A stretch of 37,135 bases of DNA from Bigelowiella natans CCMP2755 (taxonomy: Eukaryota > Protista > Cercozoa): NCBI GenBank assembly GCA_000320545.1, contig ADNK01001813.1, forward strand, positions 1-37,135, given 5' to 3'. A model generated the notes under the pieces. It searched no databases. It was not told the origin of the DNA and saw only the letters and a list, made by a program, of their open reading frames with translations. This document shows, piece after piece, positions 1-31,442 of the stretch; position 1 is the first letter of the stretch, and the number at the start of each line of letters is the position of its first letter. The position numbers and the translations under genes were made by a program.

Positions 1-9
1 ATGCTTCAT

Positions 10-358
10 GGCACCTGTACACCTCTAGCTCACCAATTATGTTTTGAAGATGCTCGTTTAAAGCCAAGTCCCGAGCAAATGAGCGGCGTATTTCAGAAAA
101 TCTTTTATAGGGGAAGAATGTCATTGAGGACTACTAAAGTTGGGAATATAAATATTTATGATTAAACAACTAAAATGTAAAACTAGATATTTATTGCGTG
201 CTAGGATAAACATTAATATGATGCTGAGGTGTGTAAGGATGTCTCGGGCATGCCTGGTTTGTCCATATTCTTTTTCATTGCTTCAATAAGCGCTTTGATG
301 TTCTTTTCTGTCGCAAGTTTCTCAGCCTTTTGAGTAGAGTATGGATAATGATTCAAAG
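10..358 (-). pseudogene. Degenerate ARM/armadillo-repeat-like gene fragment (2 exons)
   Basis: Exon 358-254 reads LNHYPYSTQKAEKLATEKNIKALIEAMKKNMDKP. A GC-AG intron (253-102) follows. The exon from 101 reads DFLKYAAHLLG, then a stop in frame; a 1-nt shift restores LALNEHLQNIIGEL and a second shift gives GVQV, an ARM-like pattern. Confidence 0.45.
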
Positions 359-663
359 CTATCTATATCATATGGAGAGCCCTTTCAGTAAAAGGGAGAA
401 CATAATCTCGATGAACGATACAATTTTAATATTGTTTGTTAATTATTTCAAACGTTATGGGACATGGGGGCACATAGAGAGATTATAGCAGCAGCAGCCG
501 CAGTAGAAGACTGCATTAGCAATCTTTTGGCAATGTGATTGCTATCATTTCTCTCCCGACAAAGGCCATTCATTAGCATTGGTGCAGCTCCAGAGCTATC
601 ATCGTTAGCACCATGCGCACTCTCATGATGATCGCATTGCAACTACTCAAAGCAAGTTAGCAC

Positions 664-2652
664 CTAAGGTCCGCTCGGTCTTTCCGAACCACGTGGCCGC
701 GATCAGAGGGGGGGGGTTGACGAAGAAGGGCTGGGCGAGCGACGCAACCAGCTGGCCAGCGAGCACGCAAGGGAACTCCGCGTCTGATATGACCCGATGG
801 CCTAAGCAGCGAATGGAGTTTCCGAGCACTTGCAGCCATGCCCCAACCTGAGGTGGTGGTGGTGGGCAGGCAGCGTGGACACGACGCAATGTATGGAGAG
901 GAGGGTGGGGGCGATGATTTCGCATTAATGGAGATGTGAATGGTAAACATCCAATACTCACAACGTCCACACACACACTCACTCACTCACTCACTCACAC
1001 ACATACACACTTGCATACATCTGCCCCCCCCACCCCCCCCCCTCCCACACTCCCCAATGCTGCCGCATACTACCAGGATGCCAGAGCGCAGTCCGTACTT
1101 CTCCACGAACCGAGAGGACGGGAAGGAAAATATTATGTAAGCCAGGAAGAAGAACGCGACTAAGTGCCCCAGATTCACCTGCGAAAAACGTCCAATGTTA
1201 CGAAGACACGCTCTCTTCATGCAGTGTATATGCTTCCACCAAACCAAAGCCGCAGCCACCACCTTGGGAACTACTGCTGTCGTTTGGGCATTGCGCCGCG
1301 CTAATCTCTATCTGTGCATTATATCGAAAATAGTTGCCGTAGTTGTTAATGTTTGGCGTTACGTCAGTGCCGTAGTAGAGCTTGGACGCGGAACTGATAG
1401 GCGCGAACGTGAAGCACACGACGTTGTTGAAGAGCGACAACAAGGAGAATATGGACAATATCCACCAGCGCTGCCAGTATAGCCTGATCGCAGATGAACA
1501 TCGGTTAGCTCATCGGATATCATCATCTTCAGCACGCTGTCGGCTGTTGTTATAGCTTCAGGCGACGGCACACAATGAGCGAAGAAATGTACTTGTATTT
1601 CGGCTCGACATGCTGCGGCGTCCGCAGGTTCATCTTGTGAACGGCCTTGGCGATCTCTCCGCGAAGTTCCTGTATCATAAGGTTGTTGTTGCATTCAGAC
1701 GATGGAGCCCTCTGCTAGTAGCCTCTCTAGGCGAAGGCCCAAAAAACGGAGAACGCCAGGGAAGGAAAGCATACATGAAAAGAGAAACGAGAGAAAAGCG
1801 GTGAATCAACCTTCAGTACTGGGTCATCGTGAATGGCGATAGGAGTCGATTGGGAGGAGGTGGGAGTTTGATGGTAATAAGGGCTGCTCTGCGCCGAACC
1901 ATCGAAACCCTCAACCTGCAAGCGTCGCTCCAGCTTCTTTACGATGCTTTGCATTGCCTTGTTGTTTATTATATTCATCATTCTTGGAATCAGCCGCAGC
2001 GTATGAGGAGGAGAAGGGGGGGGGGCGCATTTTTGTGGCAAAATGGTCAAATTTAACAGGCATGTATATTGTAGTACCTGGGCATTGAGGGCGACAAACA
2101 ACTGCAGCGCTCGCACATCGTCCTATTGTTATGTGTACGTCAAATATACAACGGGGTGGGTAGATGTCCCGTATCGGGTTGTGATGCAAAAGTATTTCAG
2201 AGCAACATCTGTGATTTCATCGTTCGGTGCGTCCGTAAGATTTGCCATTGTAGCATGGAAAACAGGTAACATTTTCAACAAACATCCATCCAAAACTTGA
2301 TTATCCGTTTTTGTGTATTTGTACCTCTGCGTCCTCAAGAGCTTGCGCCAACTTATTGTCGGGGAGTCTCATCACCCGCTTTAGCACTTCAATATACCCA
2401 TGCGCATATAACTCTTTGACCTACGGGATGTAGAGACGCCAGGTAAATACATGACCGTGTCGCGACTGAAACTTTGTGGTTTTGTTTCCGATCATTCCGC
2501 GAATTATATCTACTACGAAAATAGAAATCGCGACAGTTTTTGGGGTTATGATTTGATTGAATAACGTTCCATCTTGGTTTTTAAAGGTAGGGTGGTTTTC
2601 TGACCCTTCGGAACTCTCTCTTTACAAGGCCCTTCACTTCGGCGAGGTTGTC
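664..2652 (-). CDS. SPX-like domain fused to FLVCR/SLC49-type MFS transporter (partial; start and C-terminal helices not resolved)
   Basis: Phase-consistent GT-AG exons: 2652-2605, 2420-2325, 2122-2078, 1957-1811, 1711-1593, 1483-1363, 1178-1074, 847-664. SPX-like motifs: VKREFRRVKELYAHGYIE and LQLFVALNAQAMQSIVKKLERR. FLVCR-like motifs: YKLYWQRWWILSIFSLLSLFNNVVCFTFAPIS, FVEKYGLRSGIL, GQLVASLAQPFFVNPPPLIAATWFGKTERTL. Further 5' exons probably lie in ~2840-3350. Confidence 0.8.
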
Positions 2653-3501
2653 CTGTGAGGGGAGGGTTTGGCAAAAGCTTTCGTTGTCATCTCTAAACTT
2701 CGTGTTTGCTTATCACGAGGGAGGCAATCAATCGTAACGGGATACGATATGTATATATTAGTACTTTAACCCACACTTTGCATAAACCTTTGATACACGG
2801 CAAATTTTGTTGTTACAGTATTTCGAGAGACTATATACCTCAGAGTCCACACGGGTCAAGCCTGCTTACAATGCAACATTGATAAGTAAGGGCCATACTG
2901 CAGACATTTGGAATATTTATGATACAAATTGTATGACTGCGACGCACCTCTACGCCTCATCGTTCTGTTACGAAGATACCGAGCCTTCGATTTCTCTTAC
3001 TTTGGTGCGAGAGAAATATAACGGATCCTCGAGCACCAGCGCCTCTCCTCAAACCGGCGCTGCAAAGATGTCTTCTGGCTTAATCAAAAAAGCACCTTGA
3101 AGAGGAAAGTCTCCTCAGAAGAGTCCTCCTGATTGAACGTGGTATCCTTTTATCGAAAAATGATGAGGGTAGTACCGTTAAATGCTAAGCAAAAACCGTA
3201 TCTGAACCTCACACGCCCACTCTACCATGAATTTCCTTCCCGGAGATTTTTATCTCAGAGGTTATGAACTTACTTTCTCGTAAATGCGTCGACCAAGGAC
3301 GGCAGGGCGTGGGAACGGAGGGGCCCGGAGGAGGGGAGGTGGGGCAAACTAAAAGTAGCTGTTTGTATTCCTCCTTTTGCCAAAATGGTGGAAACGAATG
3401 CGGTTTTTATATTACGTCAAGAAATATAACCTTGTCGTAATTTTATTTTCAATGCGAGCGTCGAACGGAAATACCCCTTCTCGGTAAATTTCTTCGCTCC
3501 A

Positions 3502-5743
3502 ATGGGGCCGGTGACAAAGAACCTGCTGCTGCTAGCAGCCATCGCTCGGTGCGCGATCCTCGATTTCGAGGACATTGGTGGTGTACCTGGTATAATTTGA
3601 ATGTATTTACTATCGTAAATGTAGACGACCGGCCGGAGAAAAGGGATTGGGACGTGGAAGGGAAGGGGGGGGTTTCGGAAGATACATGGAAACCCTTCTT
3701 CACCCAAAATATGCATCTTGTCCTTTGTTGGATATACGAAGGATACAGTGTTTATCAATAATGCATGATACAAAGGGTTTTCGGTGAAGAATATGGATTG
3801 AATGTTTAAATGTGAAGACTGAGACGATATTCTTCGGGGTTTCTAGTAAAATATCTTCTTTCCATGGCGCAGATTTCGAACATCATCATACAGCGTCCGT
3901 ATTCTTCACCTTTTAAATTCCGCATATCAGACTCAAGTTCGCTAGACACTGTGGTGAAAAACGGGCGCCTACTGAACCAAACTCTCAACAACGCCACTTT
4001 TCTCCCCGGGGACGTTCTCGTGTTCCCAAACAAGACCTTCCACATCATGGGAGGTATTATTGCCGACAACCTGGACTCCGTGACGATTTCCTTCGACGGG
4101 ACCATCGTACTATCGAACGATTTGAAGCATTGGCCGAGGAGTAGTGGTAGCAAAGTACTGGAGTGCTTTCTCTTCAACAACGCCAAAAACTTGACTCTCA
4201 CCTCGTCCGGCAAAGGCTTGATCGACGGCAATGGCGGAAAGTGGTGGGGAATTCCCGGTATCGGTTATCTTGTTAGGCAGGAAAACCGACCCCGTCTTAT
4301 GCGATTCGAGTATTGTTCCGACTTGACAGTTGAGAACCTGATTCTCAAGAATTCGCCATATTGGACCTTCTTCGCTGGCCAAGTCAACGGCCTTACGGTA
4401 CGCGCACTCTCGCAGCGAGCTGATTTCCTTTTTGTTCATTCGCTATTCTTTTCGAACGGATAAGAATAGAAGGAAGAAGACATTCTCTTGAGTGAATACG
4501 ACGAGATTCTAAATGCTCACTTGCTGGAATCTTCGCTGTTTGTTGGCTCACTCTCTTAGGTTCGATACACGGATATCGATGTCCGCCGCACGAATATAGA
4601 CAGGCACGATATCATTGACCTCACAGCCTTCAACACGGACGGTTTTGATGTGACTGGAAGGAACGTACATATTCACGACTGCAACGTTTGGAACCAGGAC
4701 GACTCCATCGCGGTGAGCAGAGATGCTGCTTGATTCATGTGATGAATAAACCGGAATGCAAATGTAGCCTCGTCCGATCGAAGAAATAACAGATAAGATA
4801 ATTATAGTTCTCCACCGTGTACTCATTTTCTTCTTGCCCGTGCCCCGAGGCTCATGCTCACTACCATTGTCGCCACCCGCACACTTACCCACTCACTCAC
4901 TCGTCTTCCCAATAGGTCAAGGATGATTCTCAGGACATGCTTTTCGAAAGGGTAAATGTGAGTGGCTTGGGCCTGGCAATTGGCTCGATTTCAGGATCGA
5001 TCGTGCGCAATATAACGTTCCGCGACTGCTATCTTCACCATACGTTCAAAGGCATCTACATGAAATTTCGCGACGGAGAGAAACCCGGATTCGTGGAGGA
5101 TATCACCTACGAGAATATTGTCATGGACGAGCCCGAACAGTTAAAAACCAAAATAACTTATAGATATGCTTTTAAGAAATGAAAATAAACATAGCCTTCC
5201 TTCGCGCACCGTTGGTGCTGTGTTTGCCGTGCGACTGGGGTCTAATCCTCTTATACAGAGAAGATTGATCGGTTTGCAGTAGCTAACTATCTCCTAGTGT
5301 ATATGGAAACAAATGCCTTTTTATCCAGTCACTGTAGCATATGCACAAACAATACAACCACACAAGCAGCACACAGCCACACGTACAATAACAGGTGGCC
5401 AATTTGGATCGGACCGGCGCAGCAGAGCGACTCAAACAATTTGTGTGCCGCCCACCCATGCTCAATTTGCTGGCCGCATTTCGATTTCAAGTGCAACATG
5501 CCAAAAGCTGCGCTGTACCGGAATGTGACTCTTCGCAACGTGCTCATTAACAACCCGAAATCTAGCCCCGGCGTCATTCTAGGGAACGCTGACAACCCGA
5601 TGCAAAACATCCTTTTCGATAACGTAGTCGTCAAGGGAGCGAAGAAAGGCTCGGAAGACTATCACACGTGCGTTGGATCCCAGGGCATAGCCACGGGGGG
5701 TACTTATCCTGTCCCCAATTGCTTTAAGGAGGTTGATAATTGA
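3502..5743 (+). CDS. Secreted glycoside hydrolase family 28 (polygalacturonase-like), 5 exons
   Basis: Exons 3502-3589, 3931-4397, 4560-4712, 4916-5139, 5395-5743. Signal peptide MGPVTKNLLLLAAIARC. GH28 motifs IDGNGGKWW, RPRLM, NSPYWT, FNTDGFD, NQDDSIAVK, GLAIGS, NITF. Confidence 0.92.
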
Positions 5744-29409: not shown

Positions 29410-30737
29410 GGTTTTGACGGCAGTTATTGATAAAATCGCACATCTCTGAACCAAAACGGCGATAATTTACAACCTAGCACAGCAATTACATAGCATTCTT
29501 GCTTCTTCGCATCAGGAAATTATCAAGATGAAGAAGACGCTTACGGGGGTTTTAAGGACCTTGAGCCTGGCGCACCTATTGCTGACGAGGCATACATGAA
29601 CCTGCGGCCATTGCTTGAGCGTTGGGCGAGATTCCTCTGCAAGATTTCCGTGAGGCAGCTTCGTATTCTAGACCCTGCTCCTCCCGTTGAGATCCCCGCC
29701 CACTTGTTGGAGCACCACGTTCGAGGCAGGCACGAACTAGACGGCTTCAAGGCTCGGAGAGTGATATCGTGTGGAACAACCAACTCTCCTCTTCCCCTGT
29801 CAGGAGCACCGTCTTCGGCAGCATCGAAGTCATCTAACGAGACGGGAAGAAACCAGGGGGGGGATTCTGGACGAAGCTACATTCAACATCGCCCGCTACT
29901 GAGATCCAGTTGCGACATAATAGTAACTAGCATGCCGCCGGGGGGCGAATCAGCGCGCTCAGTAGTGTCAGCGTGTATGAACTCTGGGAATGCATGGGCC
30001 ATACACGTGCCGCTGCATATGCTACAATCTCCCTGGCTGGCGAGAGTTCTAAGGACTGCAGGTTCTTCCGCAGCTCCAAGAGCACTGTCGCAGCGGAATC
30101 GCGGTGGTGCTGCTGCTGCTGCCGATTCAGGGACGACACGGCCTCTTCTCTACACAATTACCTCGTCCAGTCACACTGCTATGGCCATCAAAAGCAGTCG
30201 GAGCTATGGCGGCACGGATCTCTGGGAGAGAATCGAGCCCCGTGTGTGGATGTGTTGGTTTCCACACAGGGCTACCAAGCGCTTCTCTCGCGAAATGCTA
30301 CTCAAAATACAGCTTGAGCAGCATCGAGGGCAAGGACAGGAGCATGCAGATGATGCTGGCGATGGTACTCTTCCGAAGCAGCAGGGCGAGCTTGGAATGC
30401 AGCAAAGACGAGCAAGCGGCGGGGAAATCGTGATCGCTCGATCGTACTCAGACCTGCCGAAGGTTATTCAGCACGTGGGAAGGGCGATTGGATTGGCAAA
30501 GGCGAATGAAGCTAGGGAGGCGATGAAGGCTCTCGATGCGGCCTTTCTTGCTTGGAACAGCAGCAGCAGTAGTAGCAGTATCACCAATAACGCCTTTGTT
30601 GCCTCGAGTCTCTCCGCGGCCCATGTCAGTTCGGACACCTCGTTGATTCATGCAATTAATGTGCCTCTTCGTCAGATAATAATGACTTTCTATCTGTGCT
30701 GCAAATATATACTCAATTGCTCTCTCTCTCTTTCTTG

Positions 30738-30771
<34 letters not shown>

Positions 30772-31442
30772 TATTTTATCTCCTACGTATATTTTGACAA
30801 CATTCGATCGAGCGGGGAGGGAGAGACAGCTTGTTAATCTGATAGATATCTGATTTCCCCTTCAACTTTCCTCTTCCCCACCCCCCGCCCCCCTCCCCAT
30901 TTTCAGACCGCGGTAGCGGCAAGTTTTGTTCGCAGTGGGAAGATCAAGGACGCAGCTCGGCTGGCTTCTGTCGCTCTCTCACGCAATCTTCCCCCAATAC
31001 CAGAGCTTTTCCTGACTATCACCTGGGCCTTTGCGAGTCGAGGTGACGTCGCTAGCACAAAGAAGGGGATTCAAGACCTCAGAGATCATCAACTAGGAAC
31101 CGCTGATGGCCGAGGAGGCGGGGACCACGTGCATGCGGCTGCTGCCATTCTAACCGCCCATTCCATTGCGCGCGAAAGAAGAAGGAGAAACAGCACTTCG
31201 CCCCCCGTTGAGGACGACGGCGATGCCATACCCCTTCGACTCCCTGACGGCGCCCTTCAAATCCCAGAAATGAAGGCTATGTTCGGTGAGGAGCTGGACA
31301 GCACAACCTCTGCCCCCGAGTGGCAGCAAAGGGTCTTCACGCTGTGCCTCGATAATTGCGCGGCGGCCAGGGCTCTCGCAGCTGCAGAGCAATGGTGCGA
31401 AGCCCAACTCGCTGTTGCGGATTGATGGCGATGGCGTGTGTT

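What the first reader, a model, noticed from the sequence alone, without database searches (positions are those of the whole stretch)
664..3350. SPX-like phosphate-sensor domain fused to an FLVCR/SLC49-type transporter
Seen: eight phase-consistent exons join an SPX-like helical region (REFRRVKELY; LQLFVALNAQAMQSIVKKLERR) through a linker to FLVCR-type TM1-4. Established: SPX domains sense inositol pyrophosphates and are fused to XPR1/PHO1, VTC, Pho87/90/91 and plant PHT5 SPX-MFS phosphate carriers; FLVCR1/2 transport choline and ethanolamine. I do not know an SPX-FLVCR fusion. Inference: it could couple phosphate status to choline or ethanolamine transport, for example in lipid remodelling under P limitation. 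The lysine cluster is partly degenerate (SIVKK for KIxKK), so the ligand may be altered or binding lost.
Basis: partly seen in the sequence, partly recalled or inferred. Interest (0 to 1): 0.8.

Follow-up and report, generated by a model that had tools for sequence, protein, structure and literature searches.

The report
Half an SPX domain on an FLVCR-type transporter
A Bigelowiella natans gene, conserved and transcribed in related chlorarachniophyte algae, joins a cut-down relic of the SPX phosphate-sensor domain (two of its six helices, most ligand-binding residues gone) to a 12-helix FLVCR/SLC49-family membrane transporter, a combination that our two-term full-text search did not find described.

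Summary
They tile junction for junction onto transcript-derived orthologue proteins. I add a 13-nt first exon with the ATG (2960-2948). The missing 3' half lies at the end of neighbouring contig C1925, so an assembly gap splits the gene and "TM1-4 only" is an artefact. The genome is Bigelowiella natans, and JGI model 76732 of this locus is wrong at both ends.

The membrane part is clearly SLC49/FLVCR. FLVCR1 and FLVCR2 are its only PDB matches (E 5e-30 to 1e-25 over 12 TM). It belongs to a protist subclade that has lost both choline cation-pi residues (W102 to C, Y325 to N), so choline or ethanolamine transport is not supported.

The N-terminal region is invisible to Pfam, BLAST and fold searches. 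A broad 48-sequence SPX profile does detect it (hhalign 88%, P 3.4e-6, 0/150 shuffles; HMM scores 0/1000 shuffles). The match covers SPX helices alpha3-alpha4 only. Orthologue transcripts have in-frame stops just upstream of the ATG, so the alpha1-alpha2 hairpin with Y22/K26 is truly absent. Only two of the four alpha4 basic ligand positions are conserved.

This is most likely an SPX-derived regulatory hairpin with canonical PP-InsP sensing lost or much weakened. It is a new variant of the known SPX-transporter fusions.

The parts
2948..2960 (-). Exon 1 (13 nt): ATG plus four codons (MRRR) and 1 nt; donor GT follows
   Evidence: Found by eye. In-frame TAA at 2999-2997. Joins exon 2 in phase. 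The basic N-terminal tail resembles the orthologue starts MRHARK and MGRSK.
2605..2708 (-). Exon 2: acidic linker and start of the SPX alpha3-like helix (ends ...LVKREFRR)
   Evidence: AG/GT sites. Aligns to orthologue residues about 5-30 (A2). tblastn.
2325..2420 (-). Exon 3: rest of the alpha3-like helix, the turn, and start of the alpha4-like helix (VKELYAHGY...EDAE)
   Evidence: 69% identical to Norrisiella. Inside the hhalign SPX match.
2078..2122 (-). Exon 4 (15 codons): alpha4-like helix up to the conserved LN of the SPX motif
   Evidence: Profile A2 finds it in the genome.
1811..1957 (-). Exon 5: degenerate SPX lysine motif (SIVKKLERR, where SPX has KILKKHDK), then a low-complexity linker
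   Evidence: Residue mapping to Vtc4 K129/K132/K133/K136 uses and PMC9911596.
1593..1669 (-). Exon 6: second conserved cytosolic block (ELRGEIAKAVHKMNL), a predicted helix just before TM1
   Evidence: No SPX similarity.
1363..1483 (-). Exon 7: MFS TM1, with Cys where FLVCR has the choline-binding Trp
1074..1178 (-). Exon 8: MFS TM2 and the loop to TM3
   Evidence: Pfam MFS_1 on this piece..
664..847 (-). Exon 9: MFS TM3-TM4 including the conserved Gln (FLVCR2 Q191 equivalent); ends in phase 1 at a GT donor
   Evidence: Query. 95% and 89% identical to the orthologues..
1..663 (.). Intron running into the contig start. Bases 1-465 are a second copy (99%) of G000:C1923:65699-66164. No further exon here; the gene resumes on C1925.

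Best explanation
The locus encodes the 5' half of one multi-exon Bigelowiella natans gene; its 3' half is on the adjoining contig. The product is a 12-TM transporter of the SLC49/FLVCR family. It belongs to a protist subclade with a remodelled substrate pocket, so its substrate is unknown and is probably not choline bound in the FLVCR1/2 manner. In chlorarachniophytes only, the carrier has a conserved cytosolic N-terminal extension of about 140 residues. The core of that extension is a long helical hairpin descended from helices alpha3 and alpha4 of an SPX domain. A third conserved helix follows, next to TM1. The SPX alpha1-alpha2 hairpin is absent, and only two of the four alpha4 basic ligand positions are conserved. 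I therefore infer that the hairpin no longer works as a canonical inositol-pyrophosphate receptor. I think it survives as a regulatory, autoinhibitory or interaction module at the cytosolic face of the carrier. Shown here: gene structure, single ORF in orthologue transcripts, SLC49 membership, profile-level SPX similarity, loss of ligand residues. Inferred: common descent from SPX and the regulatory role.
For: Gene and fusion: exons tile onto orthologues. Nine exons give 297 codons with no stop, all AG/GT. Orthologue transcripts L020 and L022 carry hairpin plus MFS in one ORF, with in-frame stops 8 and 15 codons upstream of the ATG. The 3' exons are on C1925. SLC49: Pfam MFS_1; the only PDB matches are FLVCR2 and FLVCR1, E 5e-30 to 1e-25, across 12 TM. 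SPX descent: hhalign of A2 against the 48-sequence SPX profile A5 gives 87.7% probability, P 3.4e-6, with 78 collinear columns over alpha3-alpha4. Shuffles score 10.9 +/- 2.1 (max 17.1, 0/150) and reversed controls about 20, against 41.2 for the real pair. A5-HMM scores are 18.1, 12.9 and 12.1 bits against shuffle maxima of 9.5, 7.8 and 7.7 (0/1000 each). A5 is a valid SPX profile: it recovers 39 distinct PDB sequences (OsSPX1/2, Vtc4/Vtc3, XPR1, SYG1, PHO1;H1, Pho90). The same register appears in a weak Vtc4 hit (5iig, E 0.7). The language-model search puts SPX clusters in its top three (0.86, 170/256 features). Conservation: the hairpin is about as conserved as the TM core. Degeneracy: Y22/K26 absent; K129 to S/N/R; K132 to K/R; K133 stays K; K136 to R/K/T.
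Against: The Pfam SPX model finds nothing at E<=10 in the exons, the orthologues or their N-termini. BLASTP and phmmer find no SPX. A narrow SPX profile gave only P=0.036. Foldseek and VIA-align return only generic helical bundles, with no SPX in the lists. The N-terminal family profile rests on only three independent sequences (Neff 1.5). A coronavirus HR1 heptad repeat matched the same helix about as well as Vtc4 did at HMM-sequence level, so amphipathic-helix bias is a real concern. No B. natans transcript was available. The regulatory role is pure inference.
Confidence: 0.68

Rival explanations
1. One reading: the N-terminus is a working, if minimal, SPX-type PP-InsP/phosphate sensor. It gates an FLVCR-type choline/ethanolamine carrier and links phosphorus status to phospholipid head-group traffic.
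For: Profile-level SPX homology. The K132 and K133 equivalents stay basic in all members, and a basic N-terminal tail (MRRR, MRHARK, MGRSK) is conserved. Strong conservation of the hairpin implies function. FLVCR1/2 are choline/ethanolamine uniporters (PMC11168923).
Against: Half of the binding surface (alpha1-alpha2 with Y22 and K26) is absent, and transcripts have upstream in-frame stops. The K129 and K136 equivalents are not conserved. Mutating PBC or KSC residues reduces InsP6 and PP-InsP binding in true SPX domains (PMC9911596). The choline cation-pi pair W102/Y325 is replaced by C/N across the whole protist subclade.
Confidence: 0.15
2. The N-terminal hairpin is an unrelated amphipathic helical hairpin or coiled coil, for example a dimerisation or membrane-proximal module. 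Its resemblance to SPX alpha3-alpha4 is convergent or compositional.
For: There is no Pfam, BLAST or fold-search support. Generic BAR, apolipoprotein and designed bundles match the model at Z 7-9. A viral heptad repeat matches the same helix. The query profile is shallow (Neff 1.5). No relative with a full SPX plus FLVCR-like arrangement was found.
Against: The signal grows from P 0.036 to 3.4e-6 as the SPX profile becomes broader. It stays in one register across two helices with SPX-like spacing. It exceeds all shuffled and reversed controls, which keep composition and helicity. An alignment-free language-model search independently ranks SPX first.
Confidence: 0.2
3. Gene-model artefact or pseudogene: the upstream exons are chance ORF fragments or a separate gene, and the MFS is a truncated relic cut off at TM4.
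For: The window stops at a contig end. The JGI model 76732 is aberrant. Bases 1-465 are a duplicated segment. No B. natans transcript was examined.
Against: Every exon aligns to transcript-derived orthologues at exact junctions. There are no stops in 297 codons. The downstream exons are intact on C1925. Two or three sister taxa express the same architecture as one ORF.
Confidence: 0.03

Closest known systems
SPX domain (Pfam PF03105), as in Vtc4, XPR1/PHO1, Pho87/90/91, plant SPX1-4 and SPX-RING (NLA) proteins
   Same: There is profile-level similarity over the two long core helices alpha3 and alpha4, in the right order and spacing. It includes the F/Y-ending alpha3 motif and the alpha4 LN...I-x-K-K motif. 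The position is N-terminal and cytosolic, on a transporter.
   Different: There is no MKFG start and no alpha1-alpha2 hairpin, so Y22 and K26 are missing. No alpha5-alpha6 similarity is detectable. The K129 and K136 equivalents are not conserved, and the near-invariant D-K becomes E-x. The region scores below every Pfam threshold. B. natans' own bona fide SPX genes (for example C1996 and C1447) start with MKFGK and are recognised.
FLVCR1/FLVCR2 (SLC49A1/A2), human choline/ethanolamine uniporters
   Same: Same MFS family. These are the only solved-structure sequence matches, and they align over all 12 TM (E 5e-30 to 1e-25). The Q191 equivalent and many TM motifs are conserved.
   Different: The cation-pi residues W102 and Y325 are replaced by Cys and Asn, and F324 by Ile. 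A Glu is conserved in TM7 (AEA..N). The N-terminus of the animal proteins has no such conserved hairpin. The substrate is therefore probably different.
Plant and algal PHT5/VPT1-type SPX-MFS vacuolar phosphate carriers
   Same: Same general design: an SPX-type module at the N-terminus of an MFS carrier.
   Different: Those proteins carry a complete, Pfam-detectable SPX domain, and (from general knowledge) a different MFS family. Here the SPX is a two-helix relic and the MFS is SLC49-type. I could not compare directly with a PHT5 sequence, because none was available by reference and no PHT5-type chain is in the PDB copy.

Membership tests
SPX domain (PF03105) | Match to the Pfam SPX model at or above the gathering score | tested here: not met
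   No hit even at E<=10 on the window exons, on full-length orthologues or on their N-termini. The six-frame genome scan finds 16 SPX matches elsewhere and none in C1924.
SPX domain (PF03105) | N-terminal alpha1-alpha2 hairpin (MKFG... start) carrying the PBC residues Y22 and K26 | tested here: not met
   Orthologue ORFs start 15-20 residues before the alpha3-like helix, with in-frame stops upstream. The hhalign match starts at SPX profile column 71. Window exon 1 encodes only MRRR.
SPX domain (PF03105) | Core helices alpha3 and alpha4 with the LN...K-I-L-K-K-x-D-K motif | tested here: met
   hhalign 87.7%, P 3.4e-6, 78 columns. Shuffled and reversed controls. HMM scores 0/1000 shuffles. The motif is present but degenerate.
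SPX domain (PF03105) | Full set of alpha4 basic ligand residues (Vtc4 K129, K132, K133, K136) | tested here: not met
   K132 to K/R and K133 to K are conserved. K129 to S/N/R and K136 to R/K/T are not. Residue roles are taken from PMC9911596.
SPX domain (PF03105) | C-terminal helices alpha5-alpha6 completing the bundle | tested here: inconclusive
   A third conserved helix exists, but it shows no profile similarity to SPX.
SPX domain (PF03105) | Binding of InsP6 or PP-InsP | not testable with these tools
   This needs ITC or MST with recombinant protein.
SLC49 / FLVCR family of MFS carriers | 12-TM MFS fold, with FLVCR proteins as closest characterised relatives over the full length | tested here: met
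   MFS_1 at E 1e-22 to 5e-28. FLVCR2 and FLVCR1 are the only PDB matches at E<=0.01, aligned over residues 146-602.
SLC49 / FLVCR family of MFS carriers | Choline/ethanolamine-coordinating residues (FLVCR2 W102, Q191, F324, Y325, Q447) | tested here: not met
   They map to C, Q, I, N and N. Cys in TM1 and AEA..N in TM7 hold in the protist relatives aligned that cover those helices.
PHT5/VPT1-type SPX-MFS | Complete SPX plus a PHT5-type MFS core | tested here: not met
   The SPX is incomplete (see above). The MFS core matches FLVCR. A direct comparison with a PHT5 sequence was not possible.

The most novel reading that the evidence does not exclude
The two-helix SPX relic, together with the conserved basic N-terminal tail and the retained K132/K133-equivalent pair, still binds inositol pyrophosphates. 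It would then be a minimal SPX sensor that gates an SLC49 carrier according to phosphorus status. That would show that alpha3-alpha4 alone can carry SPX signalling, and it would extend PP-InsP control to a transporter family not known to be under it.
Probability: 0.15. Interest if true: 0.75.

Novelty: new variant of a known kind. Interest (0 to 1): 0.55.

Why it matters
SPX domains are the common eukaryotic receptors for inositol pyrophosphates. They are known on a small, fixed set of partners: EXS, VTC, SLC13-type, PHT5-type MFS, RING and stand-alone proteins. This case adds an SLC49/FLVCR carrier to that set. It also shows an SPX domain in a cut-down form that standard domain annotation cannot see, so domain-architecture surveys would miss it and any similar relics. 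It offers a natural experiment on what the alpha3-alpha4 core of SPX can do without the alpha1-alpha2 ligand-binding hairpin. Separately, it points to a widespread protist SLC49 subclade whose pocket lacks the choline-binding aromatics, which cautions against transferring 'choline transporter' annotations to it. The scope is narrow, a few chlorarachniophytes, and the function is untested.

Tried and rejected
1. I looked for the rest of the gene on C1923, which shares window bases 1-465 at 99%. It has no MFS exons there; the segment is only a duplicate.
2. I looked for an MKFG-type first exon between 2709 and 3860 by eye and with the SPX HMM. There is none.
3. Pfam on ORF pieces gave only a weak MFS_1 hit.
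4. BLASTP and phmmer of the N-terminus against B. natans SPX proteins and the PDB gave nothing. The best match was a coronavirus HR1 repeat.
5. The N-terminal profile searched against the B. natans genome hit only its own exons, with no SPX gene among the hits.
6. A narrow SPX profile of chlorarachniophyte SPX-RING proteins only was marginal: P 0.036, with 2-7 of 200 shuffles reaching it.
7. Foldseek and VIA-align on the AF2 model returned only generic helical bundles. The VTC hits at ranks 26 and 28 lie outside the SPX region.
8. I searched ten distant FLVCR-like proteins with long N-terminal extensions for an intermediate with a full SPX. None has one.
9. I tested whether the second conserved block corresponds to SPX alpha5-alpha6. 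It does not.
10. Earlier scan notes held nothing relevant.
11. I did not run a PHT5-versus-SLC49 phylogeny, because no PHT5 or animal SLC49 sequences were available by reference.
12. The joined spliced model was not sent to any search or fold. Searches used single exons and orthologue transcript ORFs by reference. One local script joined the exons only to count stops and check phase.
Full report
What is in the window. The window is the first 37,135 bases of contig C1924 of a 91-Mb eukaryotic assembly. The assembly is Bigelowiella natans, because a protein in the public collection that matches this locus is JGI model Bigna1|76732. Each motif exists only across a splice junction: REFRR|VKELY and LNAQ|AMQSIVKKLERR.

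Gene model. I derived exact exon boundaries from the sequence. There are nine exons: 2960-2948, 2708-2605, 2420-2325, 2122-2078, 1957-1811, 1669-1593, 1483-1363, 1178-1074 and 847-664. All internal boundaries are AG/GT, the phases agree, and the 297 codons contain no stop. The first is new. It is 13 nt long, carries the ATG, and has an in-frame TAA 13 codons upstream. Searches used single exons or orthologue transcript ORFs by reference, and the exons were joined once in a local script only to count stops and check phase.

Independent support for the model. I sent the TM3-4 exon to the exhaustive HMMER search. It found three close relatives: P0003, P0001 and P0002.
- P0003 is the aberrant JGI model of this locus. 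It has a wrong start inside an intron and a wrong 3' end inside a repeat.
- P0001, with its cluster-mate P0085 (found), comes from the Norrisiella sphaerica transcriptome MMETSP0113.
- P0002 comes from a JGI sample (3300017075) that I take to be another transcriptome, and P0086 from a further MMETSP transcriptome.
The window's upstream exons, given one by one, tile end to end onto these proteins with junctions exactly where I placed them (A2).

The transcript contigs L020 and L022 carry the helical region and the whole MFS in one ORF. In-frame stops lie 8 and 15 codons upstream of the ATG. This rules out 'two separate genes'. It also shows that the short N-terminus is complete.

Why only TM1-4 was seen. 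Below base 664 the window holds no further exon. Bases 1-465 are a 99% copy of an internal segment of C1923, which has no MFS exons. Searching the genome with P0002 finds the remaining exons, for orthologue residues about 413-628, on C1925:70749-72752. They are on the same strand, about 110 bases from that contig's end. The gene is therefore split by an assembly gap that hides about 125 residues (TM5 to TM7). It is not truncated.

The membrane part. Pfam gives MFS_1. Against all PDB sequences, the only matches at E<=0.01 are FLVCR2 and FLVCR1, at E 5e-30 to 1e-25 across all 12 TM. The SLC49/FLVCR assignment is therefore confirmed.

The substrate pocket, however, differs. In FLVCR1/2, choline and ethanolamine are held by cation-pi contacts with W125/W102 and Y349/Y325, and by Q214/Q191 and Q471/Q447 (PMC11168923). 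In the alignment these positions, in FLVCR2 numbering W102, Q191, F324, Y325 and Q447, map to C, Q, I, N and N.

The same Cys in TM1 and an 'AEA..N' motif in TM7 occur in the nearest relatives from other protists, including Colponema and Cyanophora. This is a distinct protist SLC49 subclade. Choline or ethanolamine transport cannot be inferred for it.

The N-terminal part: tests that found nothing.
- Pfam SPX finds nothing at E<=10 in the exons, the orthologues or their isolated N-termini.
- The SPX model scanned over the whole genome finds 16 SPX matches elsewhere and none in this contig.
- BLASTP and phmmer find no SPX.
- The AF2 model has a confident hairpin (helices 16-47 and 51-97, pLDDT 80-95) and a third helix at 118-133. 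It matches only generic helical bundles, below the noise level for helical models.
- A narrow SPX profile gives only P 0.036.

The N-terminal part: tests that support SPX.
- The family profile ranks the Vtc4 SPX third in the PDB (E 0.7), aligned on helix alpha4.
- The language-model search ranks SPX clusters first to third (0.86; 170 of 256 features, at the tool's threshold).
- A broad SPX profile gives the decisive result. It has 48 sequences from plants, fungi, oomycetes and protists, and it recovers 39 distinct SPX-bearing PDB sequences: OsSPX1/2, Vtc4/Vtc3, XPR1, SYG1, PHO1;H1 and Pho90. Against it, hhalign gives 87.7% probability, P 3.4e-6 and score 41.2. There are 78 collinear columns covering SPX alpha3 and alpha4.
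- Column shuffles score 10.9 +/- 2.1 (max 17.1; 0 of 150), and reversed profiles score about 20.
- Scoring the SPX HMM directly on the three orthologue N-termini gives 18.1, 12.9 and 12.1 bits. Shuffle maxima are 9.5, 7.8 and 7.7 (0 of 1000 each), and reversed sequences score 2-6 bits. The register is the same.
I conclude, at about 75%, that the hairpin descends from an SPX domain.

What is left of the SPX domain. Only alpha3-alpha4 remain. The hhalign match begins at SPX profile column 71. The orthologue ORFs have just 15-20 residues before it, and those residues are basic then acidic, not MKFG-like. The second conserved block before TM1 has no SPX similarity.

In Vtc4 the ligand residues are PBC Y22, K26 and K133, and KSC K129, K132 and K136 (PMC9911596). 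Here their fates are as follows:
- Y22 and K26 have no counterpart.
- K129 is S, N or R.
- K132 is K or R.
- K133 is an invariant K.
- K136 is R, K or T.
B. natans' own true SPX genes keep MKFGK and the full KILKKHDK motif. The hairpin is nevertheless about as conserved among the chlorarachniophyte sequences as the membrane core, so it is under selection for some function.

Distribution. The extension is found only in the chlorarachniophyte sequences. The nearest relatives from other protists lack it. Ten more distant FLVCR-like proteins with long N-termini have no SPX. It is therefore a lineage-specific addition.

Mechanism, as far as it can be committed to. The product is an SLC49-type carrier of unknown substrate. 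The conserved TM7 Glu hints at a cationic substrate or proton coupling, but that is inference only. Its cytosolic face carries an SPX-derived hairpin plus a juxtamembrane helix. By analogy with SPX-bearing transporters, the module most likely regulates the carrier through autoinhibition or partner binding. With half the ligand surface missing, canonical PP-InsP sensing is probably lost or much weakened. I give about 15% to retained sensing.

Novelty. No paper in the searched library holds both 'SPX domain' and 'FLVCR', and a recent FLVCR/CTL family comparison never mentions SPX. Because Pfam cannot see this relic, architecture surveys would not have counted it. I class it as a new variant of a known kind, the SPX-transporter fusions. 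It is interesting to phosphate-signalling and SLC49 specialists, but it is narrow in taxonomic scope and functionally untested.

Noticed in passing
window 1-465 and G000:C1923:65699-66164: The first 465 bases of this contig are a 99% copy of an internal segment of contig C1923. The JGI model 76732 wrongly takes its last exon from this segment (window about 216-362). It could be a dispersed repeat inside the intron or a contig-end assembly artefact next to the gap.
   Followed up: partly
G000:C1925:72664-72863 (end of contig): C1925 ends in long poly-G / GA-rich runs right after the last mapped exon of this gene. This is probably why the assembly breaks inside the gene.
   Followed up: no
window 3864-4463 (+), continuing in further exons to about 5000: The divergently transcribed neighbour encodes a glycoside hydrolase family 28 (polygalacturonase-like) protein (Pfam E 4e-8). 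It shares a 5' intergenic region of about 900 bp with the transporter gene.
   Followed up: partly
G000:C3697:20878-22193 (-): A second, distant FLVCR-like MFS gene in B. natans, 25-29% identical to P0002. It sits in largely uninterrupted ORFs, and no SPX-like match was reported for it.
   Followed up: no
window 960-1045 and many other contigs: A (CA)n / (CACT)n / poly-C microsatellite inside the intron between exons 8 and 9 recurs on dozens of contigs. It is a common simple repeat of this genome.
   Followed up: no
window 29596-30837 (+): A 413-aa ORF with no Pfam hit at E<=0.01.
   Followed up: no
P0005, P0006, P0009, P0012, P0033 (Colponema, Cyanophora and other protists): A widespread protist SLC49 subclade has Cys in place of the FLVCR choline-binding Trp in TM1 and a conserved Glu-containing 'AEA..N' in TM7. 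This suggests a substrate different from that of animal FLVCR1/2.
   Followed up: partly
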